64,000 bases of DNA from Auanema rhodensis (taxonomy: Eukaryota > Animalia > Nematoda): contig OZ059899.1 in NCBI GenBank assembly GCA_964057225.1, positions 12,152,001 through 12,216,000 on the forward strand, given 5' to 3'. Of the stretch, positions 58,255 to 64,000 are shown in pieces. The stretch's first letter is position 1; each line of letters begins with the position of its first letter. The position numbers were made by a program, and so were the translations under genes. The notes below the pieces were generated by a model. It made no database searches. It was not told where the DNA came from and worked only from the letters and a program-made list of their open reading frames with translations.

Positions 58255-59235
58255 ACATTTGTCTTCATTTTTTAACATTAACAGTTGTTTAATTACAAAA
58301 CACACATGCGAAAACAATTACAAAAAAAAGGGAATATACACCTGATTTTCAGCATTATGCAACAATTCAAATTAAATTAAAATGTTTGCAGAGTCGAAAA
58401 ATTATCAAATGAAAAAATAATTGTGTTCATTTCCAAAATACAACCGTTCTTCAAAAACTACAACAAAAAATGATTGGAGAGTCACAATCGTATCACGTGA
58501 AAGTGCACGTGTGGTCAACGTCATTCTCATTTCAAAAAGTGCCTATCATGTACTTTTAAAATTCAATTATGAAAACTTTGAATAACCTTACCGTATAATA
58601 TTTTATGCAAAATTCCCTTTTAATAAAATTTTTCAGCACATGATCATTGTTATGGAAATATGTATGCTTATTGTTCAAAATGGAAAAAATTGTATTTATT
58701 TGAATCCAATGATGGCATTTTTATCAAAAAGCTTTCAAATTTTTTCTAATAGTACACCGAATCCCATAGATTTTTTTTTCATGGATAAAGAAAATTTTGT
58801 GTATATTATTATGATAATCTGTGAGCGAATAATGGATAAATTCATCGCGACTGATTGGAGAGAAAAAAATATCTGAGGGATAAAGCACAGTAAGATAGAA
58901 TCTTTAATAAAATTATTCATTTTCTCAATACCTCTTACTTTCATTTTATTTTACTATTTTGATATTTCAGTTAAAGTTTATTAGTTTCGATTTTGATAAG
59001 AGGGAAACAAGAAAATTTCAGTTGAAATTACACGTTCACCATTTTATTGGCAACGAATTTCTTAATGACAAAATGACTGCACTCTCTTTACAGCGTCATG
59101 ACCAAATATTGTAGTAAACATCTGACGCAAATTTTTATTTCAAACGATTTTTTTTCTTTAAATTCTTTAGAATAATGTATTTAAGTTGCTCTAAAGACTT
59201 CAATAATTTCAGTCTTCGAACGGTAAATAGTATTT

Positions 59236-61422
59236 ATGGCTAATATTACAAATTTGAACAAACCCAAAGGTTAGCCTTTGATTTAATTTTTCTTGGGCAT
59301 AGTTTCTTATTTTTAGACGCATTCGAGCAGCTTGAAGACGAAGAGGGCTCACGTCAAGGTTTCTGCCACATTAGAATTCAACAACGTACCGGAAGAAAGA
59401 CTATTACTACAGTCCAAGGTGTTGGTACTGAGTACGATCTCAAGAAAATCGTTAGATATTTAAAGAAGGTATGAGTAATTTTTTTGAATTTTTTAAAAAT
59501 GGCCTGAGTTATTTCCCTGTACTGGTGGCTGTATGTGTCTCATTATGCCTCCTGTTGCAGTGAGATGGCGTTTCTGTTGTGGACCCTTCTTGCTACATTC
59601 CGTTTAATATCGGTGGTCTTGGTGCAATCATGGTTTGTACCTGACGAAGTCTACCAATCGAGCGAAGTTGCCCATCATCTTATATTTGGGAAAGGCCATT
59701 TGTCATGGGAATGGCATCACGCTCTTCGTTCGTTCATTCATCCTGGAGTTTTATCTCTGTTATTCAAGTTACTTGAACTTGTTGGATGGGACTCGCAAGT
59801 TACACTTGTTAATGCACCCCGTATTTTCCATGCTTTACTATTTTCTTTTGCTGATATCTCATTTTATTCGCTTTGTAAGAGATTATCAACCACCTCTAAA
59901 GAAGCTTGGTACTCTTTTCTTACCTATATTTCTTGTTGGTTCATCTTTTATTGTGCCCCCAGAACTTTATCTAATTCTTTAGAAACTGCTTTAACATTAA
60001 TAGCTTTGAATTGGTTTCCCTTTGAAGGTAGTCGTTATCGAGGGTCCGTATATCCTTATATTTTACTTGGTAGCATAACTATAGTCATTAGACCAACAGC
60101 AGCTCTTATTTGGCTCGTTCTGGGTATATATCACTTGTTCACTTCTTCTAATCCTATTGGTCTTCTTCTCGCTGTAGTTTTACCCACCACTGTTCCAGTT
60201 ATTGCAGGTGCATTTCTGCTAGATTCTTTCTCTTATGGTCACCCAACCTTTTCTCTTTGGAACTTTTTGTGTTTTAATGTTTTTGAAGGAGGTAGTGCTC
60301 ACTTTGGAGTTCATCCCTGGCACTGGTATTTCACCCAAGGAATTCCATCAGTTTTCACCATCCAACTTCTTCCCATTATTTTAGGTTACCACTATTCAAG
60401 ATCCGTCACTCGTTTACCATTCTATGTTGCAGCGTTTTATGTTCTTTTCCATTCAATACTCCCTCATAAGGAACAACGATTCCTTCTACCAATTCTACCT
60501 TTCTGTTGTCTCTATGCTGGGTCCTTCTTTAGCTCCCGTTCATATCAACGTTTGCGTAAATTTTTGTTTTGGTTCATGCTGTTGTCGAATATTATCATAG
60601 CCCTCTACACGGGACTTCGTCATCAAATTGGCCCTTTTACTGCCTCTGGTTCGATTATTCAGAAGTTAAAAGTTGACCAACAGACTAATTTACTTGTTCT
60701 TATGCCTTGCTATTCGATTCCTGGTCACAGTTTCTTCCATAACTATGCAGGAGAGATTCGTCAGCTCGATTGTTCCCCTGATTTGAATGGGGTCGGAGGT
60801 CTAGATGAAGCCGATCTATTCTATTCGGATCCTGAAATGTGGCTTGATAAAAACCCTCCATCGAACTATTCTCATATACTTTTGTATGAAAAATTGTATA
60901 AAACATTGGATTATGTTCTCAATAGATTGCATTATACTGTTTGTGATCGCATTTTCCATTCTGATTTCTTAACATCTTCTCGTCAAGACCATTATATGAT
61001 TGTATTATGTAAAAGTTGAATTCTTCTACCTCTTCTTCTTAGTTTCCTGTGTGTTGTTCTAATGTTAAATTTCGTGAAAGTGAATATGTTAGTCAGAGAT
61101 ACATTACCTTTTTCTAATGTCCTTGGTGACTTCACATATACATCTTTAACCCTTAACAATCAAAGAAAAATGACTTGTACGAAAACCAATATAACCTTCG
61201 TTCAATACCTTTCATTTTAATTTTTTAGGAATACAGTTGTAACGGAACTGTTGTTGTTAATCCTGAATATGGAGAGGTTATGCAGTTCACTGGAGACCAA
61301 AGGCAACAAATCAAGGATTTCCTTGTAAAGGTTTTCAATATTTCAATCTGACATCATCTTACAATAATTTTTTACAGGTCGGAATTGTGAAAGAGGATAA
61401 CTGTAAAGTTCACGGTTTCTAA
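59236..61422 (+). CDS. eif-1: Eukaryotic translation initiation factor 1 (SUI1), 110 aa; exons 59236-59269, 59317-59468, 61229-61330, 61378-61422
   Basis: MANITNLNKPK|DAFEQLEDEEGSRQGFCHIRIQQRTGRKTITTVQGVGTEYDLKKIVRYLKK|EYSCNGTVVVNPEYGEVMQFTGDQRQQIKDFLVK|VGIVKEDNCKVHGF*. A TTTCAG trans-splice-like acceptor ends at 59212. The gene is absent from the ORF track because its exons are short. Confidence 0.96.
59565..61019 (+). CDS. PIGB: GPI mannosyltransferase 3 (PIG-B/Gpi10, GT22), single exon, nested in eIF1 intron 2
   Basis: 484-aa polytopic ORF with WFVPDEVYQSSEVAH, SWEW...LRS, RTLSNSLET, IRPT, FGVHPWHWYFTQG, HKEQRFLLP, LMPCYSIP and LDCSP...DEADLFY. The first true ATG is 59565; the track's 59535 start is a GTG. 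Confidence 0.93.
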   Translation: MAFLLWTLLATFRLISVVLVQSWFVPDEVYQSSEVAHHLIFGKGHLSWEWHHALRSFIHPGVLSLLFKLLELVGWDSQVTLVNAPRIFHALLFSFADISFYSLCKRLSTTSKEAWYSFLTYISCWFIFYCAPRTLSNSLETALTLIALNWFPFEGSRYRGSVYPYILLGSITIVIRPTAALIWLVLGIYHLFTSSNPIGLLLAVVLPTTVPVIAGAFLLDSFSYGHPTFSLWNFLCFNVFEGGSAHFGVHPWHWYFTQGIPSVFTIQLLPIILGYHYSRSVTRLPFYVAAFYVLFHSILPHKEQRFLLPILPFCCLYAGSFFSSRSYQRLRKFLFWFMLLSNIIIALYTGLRHQIGPFTASGSIIQKLKVDQQTNLLVLMPCYSIPGHSFFHNYAGEIRQLDCSPDLNGVGGLDEADLFYSDPEMWLDKNPPSNYSHILLYEKLYKTLDYVLNRLHYTVCDRIFHSDFLTSSRQDHYMIVLCKS

Positions 61423-63712
61423 GCTTTTCACTGTTATTTTGTTTCGTTTTTTCTTGCTTTTTTTCCATCTATTGTATCTTTCGCAGTAGTTTTTATTGGT
61501 TCTTTCTTACCTATTTGGGCTGAACCTATGTGGGATAGCCTTCTCTCAGACCTTTTTCTATTATAATGTAATGTGTTTGGGCTAAAGGATAAATCTCGAC
61601 TTGTTTGTTTTTGATCATACACTTGTATTAATGATGTGCGATTTTGAATGAAGAAAAAAAAAGAATTCCGGAATTTCTTTACCAACTTAAGACGCATAAT
61701 ACCGAGACACTTGAAAGGGGCGTGGTACTATTGCTTGGGGGCCTCCTCCTTCCTCGTACAAACATACGCCAGTCATATCCTACCCGCACTTATTTTCAAA
61801 TACCTTCCTTATACAGATTGATACTGCTTCTGATGCAGTAACGACTTAGTAGAATGTGAGTGTTTTTCTCCTTTTCTAGCTTCTCATATGGACTTTCCCC
61901 ATATGTTTACTGAACTGTGAACTATACTAGTTGGGAAATCTTTGAAAAACTAGCTGCTTCATCTATAGAATTGTTGCAAAAAACGTTTAGTAACGTAGAA
62001 GCAACAAACCTTTCATTCAGTTTGTTAGTATTCGTTGAACTTTTATAATTAATTCAAAAAAATCTTCAATTAAACATATGCATTTTCTCAGAAATTTAAA
62101 TTTCTCCTGCTTCATCTGTGTGGACATGACTCATCTTACAAGTATAAGGAGAACATCCTCCAGGAGACGAAGGAAATTTGAAACAAATCTAAAGGTATGC
62201 ATCTCGTTATCTTCTTCACTTCCTTAAATGTTCTAAATCAGACGTTTCTCCCCATTCCTCCCCTATCAATTCAAATGAAATCACCGTCAAAGTACAGTTT
62301 TCCATCAATCTTATTGTCCATCCTGAAACGATTTGAACCAAATAGAAGACGTTCGTTCGTTCTCAAAAGGAAGGAATTTTAAATTAGACTCATAAACCTG
62401 AGTTAGGTCTTCTTTCGAGATTATTCATTAACACATCAAAAAGATTCCGCTGCTGGTTTTCTGAACCGAGTTACACCACTTGCATGATTCTTCTCCGATA
62501 AATACTTTTTTTCACAAAGAATATACTCATCAACAAGCTTCGAATAAGGTTCAAAAACACTATTTCGTCATCATTCTCAACAGAAAAGATAAATATAGTC
62601 GCTTTGGTATATGAAATTGACTATAAATCATACGATTTTATTGTCCTCTGCGCCCACCTTCTTGTTTTATTCGTCCATTTTGTCCACAAATGGTAATCAA
62701 ATTTCAGTATTTCTTAGCATCAATATGTGATCTAGAACTCTTTATGTCAAATTCTCAATTGGGAATTCGATATCCTAAAGCACCAGGTAAGCAGCGACCA
62801 TTTCCCATATGATCTCACCTCCATATATGAATCCAGAAGTATTTGAATTACTGGAAAAACTTGAAAAGTCCAAGTTATCAGCACATGACCTAATACATGT
62901 TCACCCAAATGCCATATTATCCGTCCTAAAGGTGATCTTCGACAGCTAGCTATAGCATCATGTTTATTTATTCAAAATTTAGGAAATAGTGAGTATCATT
63001 TCTCCCGTATTTAACCATGAAGAATTTGTTTGCATCTCCGAAAACATGTCAGAAGAATTATTATGCGTCTATCTTAAAGGGTATAACAAAAAACTCTGTA
63101 TATCCCCCTTATTCTAACTTTATTGTTATAGATTAATGGATTGCTTATCGTACGAACATAACATCACCCTTCAGCTTGTTTGTCAATCCCTTTCAAAATT
63201 AATCAAAATGTCTAAACCTAAGATGACCTCACTTACAGGTAACATGCAGGCAATTAATACTTGAAGCATGCTTCGTTTATTTAGATGTACTGATAACCTT
63301 TACACCCTTGTTCTTTCCCCAGTGTCGGACAACCAAGTCATTCCTTTGTGCAACTAGAGCTTTGCTATTGATGATTGAAAAACCAGAAATTATTTTTGAA
63401 GATCACCTTATTGAGAAGGGAGATTTCGAAAACTTCCTAGGTTTTGTTATTTTTAAGAAATGAAATCAAATACTTCGCATCAGATCTAATTGAATCTATG
63501 GAAAACGACGAAGAATATGACAGTGGAAATGAAACTTCATCGACACCTGATGAAATGGAAGAGATTACACACACTAACCTCCAAGATTCTTCCCCATTTT
63601 ATGTGATTACGTTTGATATATAATTGAAATAAACAATTTTAATAAACAGTCCTTCATTCACTTACGTTAACAAAAAACAAAATGAACGAGAACATATTAA
63701 CATATAACCACC

Positions 63713-64000
63713 TCAATACTTCTTAACGGCTTTCTGGTCATCAACAACAACATTGGGGAGAGCAATCTCCTGAAAAAGATAAAATAATTATAACAAAACG
63801 TTTGAAAAATACTTACCATCTTGTCAATCATAGCCTTGGTGGTTGGGTCAACCTTAAGGATTCCGATTTGAGAAGGATCAACAATAGAGATTTCTGGCAT
63901 GTAGTTATCTCTTCTCTCACGCTCCTCTTCTTGAAGCTTGATGGAGATACCGCGGACTGGTCCTTGCTCAATTCTCTTCATAAGATGAGTGATGTATCTG
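63713..64000 (-). CDS. rps-17: 40S ribosomal protein S17 (3' part; gene continues beyond the window)
   Basis: [35 protein letters not shown]...; intron 63816-63770; last exon [18 protein letters not shown] with stop at 63713-63715. Confidence 0.95.

What the first reader, a model, noticed from the sequence alone, without database searches (positions are those of the whole stretch)
59236..61422. eIF1-PIG-B splice switch: candidate bicistronic mRNA that couples start-codon stringency to GPI-anchor synthesis
Seen in sequence: (1) The whole PIG-B ORF lies on the same strand inside eIF1 intron 2 (59469-61228). (2) An acceptor ttgcAG ends at 59560 and is followed by TGA-G-ATG-G. Splicing the phase-0 eIF1 exon 2 donor (59468) to it stops eIF1 after codon 62, and PIG-B starts 1 nt after that stop. 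(3) The eIF1 AUG has a weak context (ttt-ATG, U at -3), while the PIG-B AUG has a strong one (G at -3, G at +4). (4) The 183 spliced nt between the eIF1 AUG and that stop contain no AUG in any frame, whereas the removed 92-nt intron contains several. (5) No AATAAA follows PIG-B, but a GTTAGT donor sits at 61088, so PIG-B may be a giant cassette/poison exon. Established: eIF1 autoregulates through its poor-context AUG, and high eIF1 promotes scanning past weak AUGs. Inference: on the PIG-B isoform, truncated eIF1 acts as a stringency-sensing uORF, so high eIF1 increases PIG-B translation (or stop-restart reinitiation occurs), and exon choice simultaneously removes functional eIF1 mRNA. From memory, C. 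elegans eif-1 and PIG-B also share a locus, so the nesting may be known and conserved; the translational logic is the new hypothesis.
Basis: partly seen in the sequence, partly recalled or inferred. Interest (0 to 1): 0.92.

Follow-up and report, generated by a model that had tools for sequence, protein, structure and literature searches.

The report
eIF1–PIG-B two-gene messenger RNA
In this nematode the only gene for a GPI-anchor enzyme (PIG-B) sits inside an intron of the only eIF1 gene, and RNA data show it is spliced onto the first two eIF1 exons, a layout conserved across distant nematodes that appears to make PIG-B translation depend on ribosomes skipping the deliberately weak eIF1 start codon.

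Summary
An intronless PIG-B ORF (59565-61019) lies on the same strand inside eIF1 intron 2. An acceptor AG (59559-60) is followed by TGA-G-ATG.

RNA-derived contigs from four runs of one study carry the predicted cis-splice 59468|59561. They run unbroken through PIG-B and the rest of the "intron" into eIF1 exon 3. The locus therefore makes two mRNAs by choosing between two 3' splice sites: eIF1, or eIF1(1-62)-stop-PIG-B. The proposed 61088 donor is not used.

- The nesting after eIF1 codon 62 occurs in C. elegans, Auanema, strongylids, Pristionchus, Steinernema, Toxocara, Dirofilaria and Strongyloides. The acceptor is followed at once by an in-frame TGA in 10 of 10 loci outside Strongyloides. 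A second species also shows the cis-spliced junction in RNA.
- The shared eIF1 exons contain no AUG between the two start codons in 8 of 9 species. ATG-forming codon pairs number 0/27 there and 10/26 in the rest of eIF1.

This supports translation of PIG-B by leaky scanning past the weak eIF1 AUG. Regulatory coupling to eIF1 level is untested. An SL1 trans-spliced PIG-B mRNA is not excluded. The nesting itself is already annotated in C. elegans.

The parts
59205..59235 (+). eIF1 5' UTR; RNA contigs begin at about 59205-59215
   Evidence: table 8. The AUG context is gtatttATGg with T at -3.
59236..59269 (+). eIF1 exon 1 coding part (codons 1-11 plus 1 nt), shared by both mRNAs
   Evidence: The joint 59269|59317 is seen in RNA contigs.
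59270..59316 (+). eIF1 intron 1 (47 nt, GT..AG)
   Evidence: joints table: skips 47.
59317..59468 (+). eIF1 exon 2 (through codon 62, ...RYLKK, phase 0), shared by both mRNAs; holds no ATG
59469..59560 (+). Short alternative intron (92 nt, GT..AG) removed in the PIG-B isoform. It holds four ATGs. Its last ~35 nt are conserved with Auanema.
   Evidence: joint skips 92, all 4 runs, no contig cover of 59469-59560.
59561..59563 (+). TGA stop of the truncated eIF1 reading frame, directly after the acceptor AG; conserved in 10/10 loci outside Strongyloides
59565..61019 (+). PIG-B (GPI mannosyltransferase III-like, GT22) ORF: 484 aa, intronless, single copy in the genome
61020..61228 (+). Rest of eIF1 intron 2. 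It is retained in the PIG-B isoform as part of its 3' UTR. It has conserved non-coding blocks, among them the 5'-splice-site-like GTTAGT at 61088-61093, which is not seen spliced.
   Evidence: the 1726-nt contig runs 59561-61256 without a break.
61229..61330 (+). eIF1 exon 3. It is coding in the eIF1 mRNA and 3' UTR sequence in the PIG-B isoform.
   Evidence: joint 59468|61229; the PIG-B contig reaches 61256.
61331..61377 (+). eIF1 intron 3 (47 nt)
   Evidence: joint skips 47, all 4 runs.
61378..61422 (+). eIF1 exon 4 coding part, with the stop TAA at 61420-61422
61423..61605 (+). eIF1 3' UTR. RNA contigs end at 61536-61605. There is a GATAAA variant signal near 61589 and no AATAAA.

Best explanation
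One transcription unit makes two mRNAs by choosing between two acceptors for the eIF1 exon-2 donor (59469).
- The distal acceptor (61228) gives the ordinary eIF1 mRNA.
- The proximal acceptor (59560) gives a bicistronic mRNA. It reads eIF1 codons 1-62, an immediate TGA, one spacer base, then the PIG-B ORF. The unspliced remainder of the intron and eIF1 exon 3 (presumably exon 4 too) follow as 3' UTR.

On this second mRNA the truncated eIF1 frame acts as a 62-codon upstream ORF. PIG-B is most likely translated by 43S complexes that scan past the weak eIF1 AUG (U at -3). They meet no other AUG for about 190 nt and start at the PIG-B AUG.

What is shown: the splice junction and contiguity in RNA; conservation of nesting and of AG|TGA; AUG avoidance confined to the shared exons.
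What is inferred: leaky scanning as the route of translation.
What is speculative: that PIG-B output therefore tracks eIF1 activity, and that acceptor choice also tunes eIF1 mRNA supply.

The intronless state of PIG-B in all nested loci suggests it began as a retro-inserted copy that captured the host gene's promoter and donor.
For: RNA evidence in the window's species:
- In all 4 RNA-like runs a 1726-nt contig joins the last 28-30 nt of exon 2 to 59561 (GT..AG, skips 92). It continues without a break to 61256.
- No contig covers 59469-59560 or the intergenic flanks, and introns 1 and 3 are removed. The runs therefore behave as mature RNA.
- Mean k-mer depth of this contig is 35, 100, 41 and 26. 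The canonical 59468|61229 joint has 146, 855, 125 and 210.

Single copy:
- PIG-B and eIF1 are each single copy in the genome, and no processed copy exists.
- Only 92 nt separate exon 2 from the acceptor, which leaves little room for a separate promoter.

Conservation:
- PIG-B is nested after the same eIF1 codon in C. elegans, Auanema, N. brasiliensis, two further strongylid-like contigs, P. mayeri, S. carpocapsae, T. canis, D. immitis and S. stercoralis.
- The acceptor AG is followed directly by an in-frame TGA in 10/10 loci outside Strongyloides. The spacer to the ATG is 1-15 nt and is otherwise unalignable.
- A Logan contig of another species (L021) starts with 30 nt encoding LKRIVRFLKK joined directly to TGA...ATG of PIG-B. 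That is the same cis-splice in independent data.

AUG avoidance:
- There are zero ATGs between the two start codons in 8 of 9 species.
- Under synonymous resampling the joint probability is 10^-10.6 with PIG-B codon usage and 10^-4.5 with eIF1's own usage.
- ATG-forming codon pairs number 0/27 in codons 1-62 and 10/26 in codons 63-110 (Fisher 2.7e-4).
- NAY codons before G are 0 T-ending of 19. NAY codons elsewhere in the same exons are 18 T-ending of 32 (p 3e-5).

Start context and established knowledge:
- The eIF1 AUG has T at -3 in 6 of 7 species.
- eIF1's poor-context AUG is bypassed more when eIF1 is high, and reporters behind poor-context upstream AUGs are stimulated by eIF1 (PMC3326321).
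Against: - No translation data exist. Leaky scanning is inferred from sequence alone.
- Contigs cannot show mRNA 5' ends or rare forms. The genome has thousands of SL1 genes, so an SL1-PIG-B mRNA using the same acceptor may exist and could be the main translated form.
- D. immitis has three out-of-frame ATGs in the shared exon, so the AUG-free rule is not universal.
- S. stercoralis lacks AG|TGA.
- The PIG-B AUG context is not uniformly strong. The -3 base is G, A, G, C, G, G, A and T across species.
- The species are related, so counts over species overstate independence.
- eIF1 genes of non-nematodes could not be fetched as a control for general AUG depletion after a weak start.
- All four RNA runs come from one study, and they are labelled RNA only by guess.
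- The isoform has a premature stop and a long 3' UTR containing an intron, so it may be an NMD substrate.
Confidence: 0.62

Rival explanations
1. The translated PIG-B mRNA is monocistronic and made by SL1 trans-splicing at the same acceptor (59560). The cis-spliced eIF1(1-62)-PIG-B RNA is then a by-product of donor/SL competition, or an unproductive NMD-prone isoform that merely lowers eIF1 mRNA. On this view the TGA is kept to end the eIF1 frame at once in that by-product.
For: - Canonical SL1 is present in thousands of tandem copies.
- An AUG 1-15 nt after the acceptor is the usual look of SL1-accepting nematode genes (established knowledge).
- D. immitis tolerates three upstream out-of-frame AUGs, which implies another route to PIG-B translation there.
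- C. elegans annotates PIG-B as a separate gene.
- C. elegans, S. carpocapsae and the strongylids have AATAAA soon after PIG-B.
Against: - There is no loose end or branch at 59561 in any of four runs. In each, the PIG-B contig is fused to exon 2 through the junction. Contig building can drop short minority tips, so this is weak evidence.
- The model does not explain the ATG avoidance confined to the shared exons in 8 of 9 species.
- The established C. elegans rule is that an acceptor with an upstream donor is cis-spliced. This is from my own knowledge and was not looked up.
Confidence: 0.22
2. PIG-B is translated from the cis-spliced bicistronic mRNA by termination-reinitiation. Ribosomes translate eIF1 codons 1-62, stop at the TGA and restart at the AUG 1-15 nt downstream.
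For: - The stop and start are very close in all species, and the TGA is invariant.
- The arrangement resembles the stop/start junctions of viral termination-reinitiation (from my own knowledge).
Against: - A 62-codon upstream ORF and a 1-15 nt spacer are both unfavourable for ordinary reinitiation (established knowledge).
- The spacer varies in length and sequence, so no conserved tethering motif is apparent.
- Reinitiation gives no reason to purge out-of-frame AUGs from the upstream ORF.
Confidence: 0.1
3. The junction is an artefact: an assembly chimera, genomic DNA, or a processed copy elsewhere in the genome.
For: - The runs are labelled RNA only by guess.
- All four come from one study.
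- The same contigs show odd back-joints at the eIF1 5' end.
Against: - The same GT..AG joint appears in 4 runs with exact k-1 overhangs.
- Introns 1 and 3 are removed, and there is no cover of 59469-59560 or of intergenic DNA.
- The locus is single copy.
- An independent run of another species shows the equivalent joint.
- The in-frame TGA is conserved.
Confidence: 0.03

Closest known systems
C. elegans eif-1 (T27F7.3) / T27F7.4 (PIGB) locus
   Same: It has the same architecture. An intronless PIG-B sits on the same strand in the intron after eIF1 ...LKK. The acceptor reads ttttcag|TGAGA ATG. The shared exons are AUG-free and the eIF1 AUG has T at -3.
   Different: - It is annotated as two separate genes.
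- It has an extra intron in the shared part, a 2-nt spacer and an AATAAA about 90 nt after PIG-B.
- No paper in the searchable library describes a shared transcript or its translational logic.
Cholinergic gene locus cha-1/unc-17 and the unc-60A/B locus of C. elegans (shared 5' exon, downstream gene nested in the first intron, alternative processing)
   Same: One promoter and shared 5' exon(s) serve two unrelated proteins, made by alternative acceptor or processing choice. One gene lies inside an intron of the other (PMC3875643).
   Different: There the shared exon is untranslated (cha-1/unc-17) or, from my own knowledge, carries only the start codon (unc-60). Here the shared exons encode 62 residues that end at a stop, so the nested gene lies behind an upstream ORF with a weak AUG.
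Stringency-sensing upstream ORFs of eIF5 (and of BZW1/2, Hox mRNAs), and eIF1 autoregulation through its poor-context AUG
   Same: An upstream AUG in conserved poor context gates a downstream ORF. High eIF1 favours bypass (PMC3326321; PMC5823381 and PMC8892498, seen by title and abstract only).
   Different: The upstream ORF here is the eIF1 coding sequence itself, truncated by splicing. The downstream ORF is an unrelated ER enzyme. No functional test exists.
Nematode SL2-type operons
   Same: Two genes come from one promoter in a nematode that has spliced leaders.
   Different: The downstream gene lies inside an intron, not after the upstream gene's poly(A) site. The mature RNA seen is cis-spliced and still bicistronic. 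No spliced leader is seen at the acceptor.
Poison exons / unproductive splicing of RNA-processing and translation factor genes
   Same: Alternative splicing puts a premature stop into the host gene's frame at codon 62 and takes away productive eIF1 mRNA.
   Different: The 'poison' segment encodes the genome's only PIG-B and is conserved as a protein-coding ORF. NMD sensitivity was not tested.

Membership tests
eIF1 / SUI1 | SUI1 domain in a ~110-aa protein orthologous to eif-1 | tested here: met
   Pfam PF01253 matches exon 2 (1e-9) and exon 3 (4e-6). The spliced CDS gives 110 aa. Residues 1-62 are 100% identical to the Auanema eIF1, and residues 11-46 are 86% identical to C. elegans eif-1. 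It is single copy.
PIG-B (GPI mannosyltransferase III, GT22) | Full-length Glyco_transf_22 domain; best named relatives are PIGB rather than ALG9/ALG12/PIG-Z; conserved N-terminal luminal DE motif | tested here: met
   PF03901 matches at 3e-82 over profile positions 2-414 of 414. Named hits are GPI mannosyltransferase 3 and C. elegans T27F7.4 (PMC3302757, PMC6742230). D27 and E28 in WFVPDEVYQ are invariant in the alignment. Enzyme activity was not tested.
Bicistronic mRNA read by leaky scanning | Both ORFs lie on one mature mRNA | tested here: met
   A 1726-nt RNA contig joins exon 2 to the whole PIG-B ORF in 4 runs. The exon 1-exon 2 joint is seen in 2 runs. Contiguity of exon 1 with PIG-B on one molecule is inferred.
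Bicistronic mRNA read by leaky scanning | Upstream AUG in weak context and no AUG between the two starts | tested here: met
   T at -3. There is no ATG over the 187 nt between the two start codons, against four in the removed 92 nt. This is conserved in 8 of 9 species, with site-specific avoidance.
Bicistronic mRNA read by leaky scanning | Downstream ORF translation depends on bypass of the upstream AUG | not testable with these tools
   Needs ribosome profiling or reporters.
Nematode SL2 operon | Downstream gene follows the upstream gene's 3' end and receives SL2 | tested here: not met
   PIG-B lies inside eIF1 intron 2. No spliced-leader loose end is seen at 59561.
Shared-exon nested locus (cha-1/unc-17 type) | Common 5' exon(s) spliced either to the nested gene or to the host's downstream exons | tested here: met
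   Both joints, 59468|59561 and 59468|61229, are seen in all 4 runs.
Cassette / poison exon with donor at 61088 | Splice 61087|61229 | tested here: not met
   No such joint is seen. The contigs run straight through 61020-61256 in 4 runs. A rare form cannot be excluded.
Termination-reinitiation | Short upstream ORF, or a conserved tethering element upstream of a stop/start junction | tested here: inconclusive
   Stop and start are 1-15 nt apart. However, the upstream ORF has 62 codons and the spacer is not conserved. No motif search was done.

The most novel reading that the evidence does not exclude
Across chromadorean nematodes, the eIF1 gene doubles as the sensor upstream ORF of an essential GPI-anchor enzyme. 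A conserved choice between two acceptors converts eIF1 pre-mRNA into an mRNA whose PIG-B output is set by how often ribosomes skip the eIF1 start codon. eIF1 activity (start-codon stringency) would then be wired directly and positively to GPI-anchor synthesis, and the same splice choice would feed back on eIF1 supply.
Probability: 0.3. Interest if true: 0.85.

Novelty: new variant of a known kind. Interest (0 to 1): 0.72.

Why it matters
eIF1's weak start codon is the textbook sensor of start-codon stringency, but known downstream targets are mostly short upstream ORFs in other mRNAs. Here the eIF1 coding exons themselves act as the upstream ORF for an unrelated essential enzyme. The arrangement has been kept since the common ancestor of nematode clades III-V, with sequence signatures (an immediate in-frame TGA and AUG-purged shared exons) that point to selection on translation of the second ORF.

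It is a rare conserved cellular bicistronic mRNA in an animal that normally resolves polycistrons by trans-splicing. It is directly testable in C. elegans, which has the same layout.

It also explains why many nematode genome annotations wrongly fuse SUI1 and mannosyltransferase domains into one protein.

Tried and rejected
- Cassette exon via the 61088 donor: no joint is seen, and the contigs run continuously.
- Second genomic copy or processed pseudogene as the source of the junction: the locus is single copy.
- A novel spliced leader to explain the 11-nt loose end CTAATATTACA before 59205: the only genomic match is eIF1 exon 1 itself. This, and the 59269->59215 back-joint with microhomology, look like template-switch chimeras of an abundant mRNA. 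They were not resolved.
- Absence of AATAAA after PIG-B as evidence: uninformative, because no + strand AATAAA exists anywhere in the locus.
- More nematode loci from metagenome contigs: eight hits at 25-40% identity over their matched segments and no close (nematode-level) relative, so not useful.
- Logan contigs L019, L020 and L022-L024, fetched as possible RNA evidence:
  - L019 and L020 carry the unspliced upstream intron.
  - L022 has neither TGA nor eIF1 sequence upstream.
  - The S. stercoralis contigs run exon 2 - unspliced 155 nt - PIG-B - exon 3 and have no AG|TGA.
- Literature searches for a published description of an eIF1/PIG-B shared transcript found none. One search was rejected for a syntax slip.
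Full report
**1. What is in the sequence**

The window carries a four-exon eIF1 (SUI1) gene on the + strand. Its coding exons are 59236-59269, 59317-59468, 61229-61330 and 61378-61422. All introns are GT..AG, and the product is a 110-aa protein. Pfam SUI1 matches both exon 2 and exon 3.

Inside intron 2 (59469-61228), on the same strand, lies one uninterrupted ORF from ATG 59565 to the stop at 61017-61019. It encodes 484 aa and matches Pfam Glyco_transf_22 over the whole profile at 3e-82. Its named relatives are GPI mannosyltransferase 3 / PIGB, including C. elegans T27F7.4. Two papers list T27F7.4 as the worm PIGB (PMC3302757; PMC6742230).

An acceptor ttgcAG ends at 59560 and is followed by TGA-G-ATG-G. 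Exon 2 ends in phase 0, so splicing 59468 to 59561 stops the eIF1 frame after codon 62, and the PIG-B AUG follows one base later. The eIF1 AUG has T at -3. The PIG-B AUG has G at -3 and +4.

Exons 1+2 contain no ATG besides the start; 3.4% of shuffles are ATG-free. The 92 nt that would be removed contain four ATGs.

One point carries no weight. There is no + strand AATAAA anywhere from 59236 to about 63150, including after eIF1 itself.

**2. The organism**

The assembly has 181 Mb in 112 contigs and carries thousands of tandem copies of the canonical nematode SL1 sequence. The closest PIG-B is that of Auanema sp. JU1783 at 76% identity. The window and the Auanema locus also align through the flanking DNA on both sides. 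This is a rhabditid nematode. Both PIG-B and eIF1 are single copy, and no processed copy exists.

**3. RNA evidence**

Four runs of one study were laid on 58900-61900. They are stored as Logan contigs and labelled RNA only by guess. They behave as mature RNA:
- Introns 1 and 3 are cleanly removed.
- The intergenic flanks and 59469-59560 have no cover.

In all four runs a 1726-nt contig joins the last 28-30 nt of exon 2 to 59561 (GT..AG, skips 92). It then runs without interruption through the PIG-B ORF, through 61020-61228 unspliced, and into eIF1 exon 3 up to 61256. The canonical joint 59468|61229 is present as well.

Mean k-mer depths of the PIG-B contig are 35, 100, 41 and 26. Those of the canonical joint are 146, 855, 125 and 210. 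These figures are rough, but the isoform is not a trace.

No 61087|61229 joint is seen, and no loose end that would mark a spliced leader appears at 59561. The locus therefore produces two RNAs by choosing between two acceptors for one donor. The PIG-B form shares at least exon 3 with eIF1 as 3' UTR. Contigs end at 61536-61605.

Limits of this evidence:
- Contigs cannot show 5' ends or rare forms, so an SL1-PIG-B mRNA is not excluded.
- Continuity from exon 1 to PIG-B, and from PIG-B to exon 4, on a single molecule is inferred.

**4. Conservation**

C. elegans has the same layout: eif-1 with an intronless PIG-B nested on the same strand. Its sequence reads ...TTGAAGAAG|gtatg ... ttttcag|TGAGA ATG.

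tblastn of the window's two proteins against fetched loci places PIG-B after the same eIF1 residue (…LKK, phase 0) in these species:
- Auanema
- N. brasiliensis
- a second strongylid contig (L018)
- P. mayeri
- S. carpocapsae
- T. canis
- D. immitis
- S. stercoralis

Many automatic annotations across clades III-V fuse SUI1 and Glyco_transf_22 into one protein, which reflects the same nesting.

In all ten loci outside Strongyloides the acceptor AG is followed directly by TGA. The spacer to the ATG is 1-15 nt and shows no other sequence conservation. Such an invariant in-frame stop makes sense only if the eIF1 frame is read across this junction, that is, if cis-splicing happens in all these lineages.

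Independent RNA support comes from contig L021, from a different run and a different, strongylid-like species. It begins with exactly 30 nt encoding LKRIVRFLKK joined directly to TGAAAACCCATCG-ATG of PIG-B.

Exceptions:
- S. stercoralis contigs run from exon 2 through an unspliced 155 nt into PIG-B, and only 24 nt later into exon 3, with no AG|TGA.
- In the one Aphelenchoides locus fetched, PIG-B has introns and no eIF1 lies within 4 kb.

**5. A test of the translational idea**

If PIG-B is reached by scanning past the eIF1 AUG, the shared exons must stay free of AUGs. They do in eight species: the window species, C. elegans, Auanema, N. brasiliensis, strongylid L018, S. carpocapsae, P. mayeri and T. 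canis. None has an ATG between the two start codons.

Resampling synonymous codons gives, per species, a probability of no ATG of 0.002-0.18 with PIG-B codon usage (jointly 10^-10.6). With eIF1's own usage it is 0.06-0.30 (jointly 10^-4.5).

The avoidance is site-specific:

| Class of site | ATG-forming or T-ending |
|---|---|
| Codon pairs that could form ATG, codons 1-62 | 0 of 27 |
| Same, codons 63-110 of the same gene | 10 of 26 (Fisher 2.7e-4) |
| NAY codons before G, shared exons | 0 T-ending of 19 |
| NAY codons elsewhere, shared exons | 18 T-ending of 32 (p 3e-5) |
| NAY codons before G, 3' exons | 10 T-ending of 20 |

The first ATG-forming site appears five codons after the exon-2 boundary. 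The eIF1 AUG has T at -3 in six of seven species.

Caveats:
- The species are related, so the counts are not independent.
- I could not obtain eIF1 genes from animals without the nest as an outside control.
- D. immitis has three out-of-frame ATGs in the shared exon. All of their ORFs end before the junction. Filariae must therefore use another route, or tolerate low output.

**6. Mechanism**

The best-supported reading is a conserved bicistronic mRNA in which the truncated eIF1 frame is a 62-codon upstream ORF. PIG-B is translated by leaky scanning past the weak eIF1 AUG.

The immediate TGA keeps eIF1-frame ribosomes from running over the PIG-B start. A 62-codon upstream ORF and a 1-15 nt spacer both disfavour ordinary reinitiation, and reinitiation gives no reason to purge out-of-frame AUGs.

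[quoted passage not shown] It is also established that eIF1 overexpression stimulates reporters placed behind poor-context upstream AUGs (PMC3326321). On that basis PIG-B output should rise with eIF1 activity. This is an inference and has not been tested.

A simpler reading is equally compatible with the data: a low-abundance housekeeping enzyme rides on a strong housekeeping promoter and is kept low by inefficient access to its AUG.

The main rival is that an SL1 trans-spliced mRNA is the translated form and the cis-spliced RNA is a by-product or an NMD-prone isoform. It remains open at roughly one in five.

**7. Other observations on the locus**

Between the window and Auanema, intron 1 and the 5' flank are barely alignable. 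Two other non-coding stretches are strongly conserved:
- the last ~35 nt before AG|TGAG;

These are candidate regulators of acceptor choice, or 3' UTR elements.

PIG-B is intronless in every nested locus. That fits an origin by retro-insertion into the eIF1 intron before the split of clades III-V.

**8. Known or new**

The nesting is already annotated in C. elegans as two genes. The C. remanei PIG-B protein even carries the name CRE-EIF-1, which hints that curators once treated the two as one gene.

Shared-exon nested loci are known (cha-1/unc-17 and unc-60; PMC3875643). So are stringency-sensing upstream ORFs.

I found no paper describing the following:
- the shared transcript;
- the invariant AG|TGA;
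- the AUG-purged eIF1 exons;
- the idea that eIF1's own start codon gates a second gene.

I class it as a new variant of a known kind. It is of real interest to translation-control and nematode RNA-processing specialists, and it is directly testable in C. elegans.

Noticed in passing
window 59205-59330: RNA contigs show odd back-joints at the eIF1 5' end. X1 joins 59269 (+ACGCA) back to 59215. X14 and X2 carry exon-1 sequence (CTAATATTACA...) in front of 59205, with one changed letter in the laid piece. Both joints sit at about 5-nt microhomologies. They are probably template-switch chimeras of an abundant mRNA. No SL1 is seen on eIF1, although tttcag|TCTTCG at 59212/13 looks like an acceptor.
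   Followed up: partly
window 61020-61228 and 59525-59560; L011 4453-4611 and 2960-2996: Non-coding blocks are strongly conserved with Auanema. They include an 18/18 match around the 5'-splice-site-like GTTAGT at 61088 and TTTAACCCTTAAC. Intron 1 and the 5' flank, by contrast, are not alignable. These blocks are candidate splice-choice or 3' UTR elements.
   Followed up: partly
L014 4480-4600 (D. immitis): The start of the eIF1 exon carrying DAFEQLE is locally repeated about three times (…GAGCAGCTAGAAGAATTTACAG…). The shared exon carries three out-of-frame ATGs, unlike all other species examined.
   Followed up: partly
L023/L024 (S. stercoralis Logan contigs): The whole eIF1 intron is only 155 nt + the PIG-B ORF + 24 nt. 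The contigs begin 29 nt (L023) or 7 nt (L024) before the exon-2 donor, and both end 28 nt into exon 3. This suggests an intron-retaining RNA path beside the spliced eIF1 mRNA. There is no AG|TGA before the PIG-B ATG.
   Followed up: no
L017 (Aphelenchoides bicaudatus): PIG-B here has introns, is only about 37% identical, and has no eIF1 exon within 4 kb. Either this lineage lost the nest or this is the older intron-bearing copy.
   Followed up: no
one search hit list: About twenty nematode gene predictions fuse SUI1 and Glyco_transf_22 into one protein, and the C. remanei PIG-B protein is named CRE-EIF-1. These are most likely annotation errors caused by the nested layout.
   Followed up: partly
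window 61783-61855 and ~63700-64000: A neighbouring spliced transcript starts near 61783-61855; its contigs carry a 255-nt loose end after 61855. The stretch near 63700-64000 aligns to the part of the Auanema locus that holds its RPS17 gene, on the opposite strand. N. brasiliensis also has RPS17 beside eIF1, so local synteny is kept.
   Followed up: no
G000:C3:6741531-6766485 and C3:14134320 onwards: There are very large tandem arrays of the SL1 sequence with 252-nt and 341-nt periods, giving more than 3600 matches.
   Followed up: no
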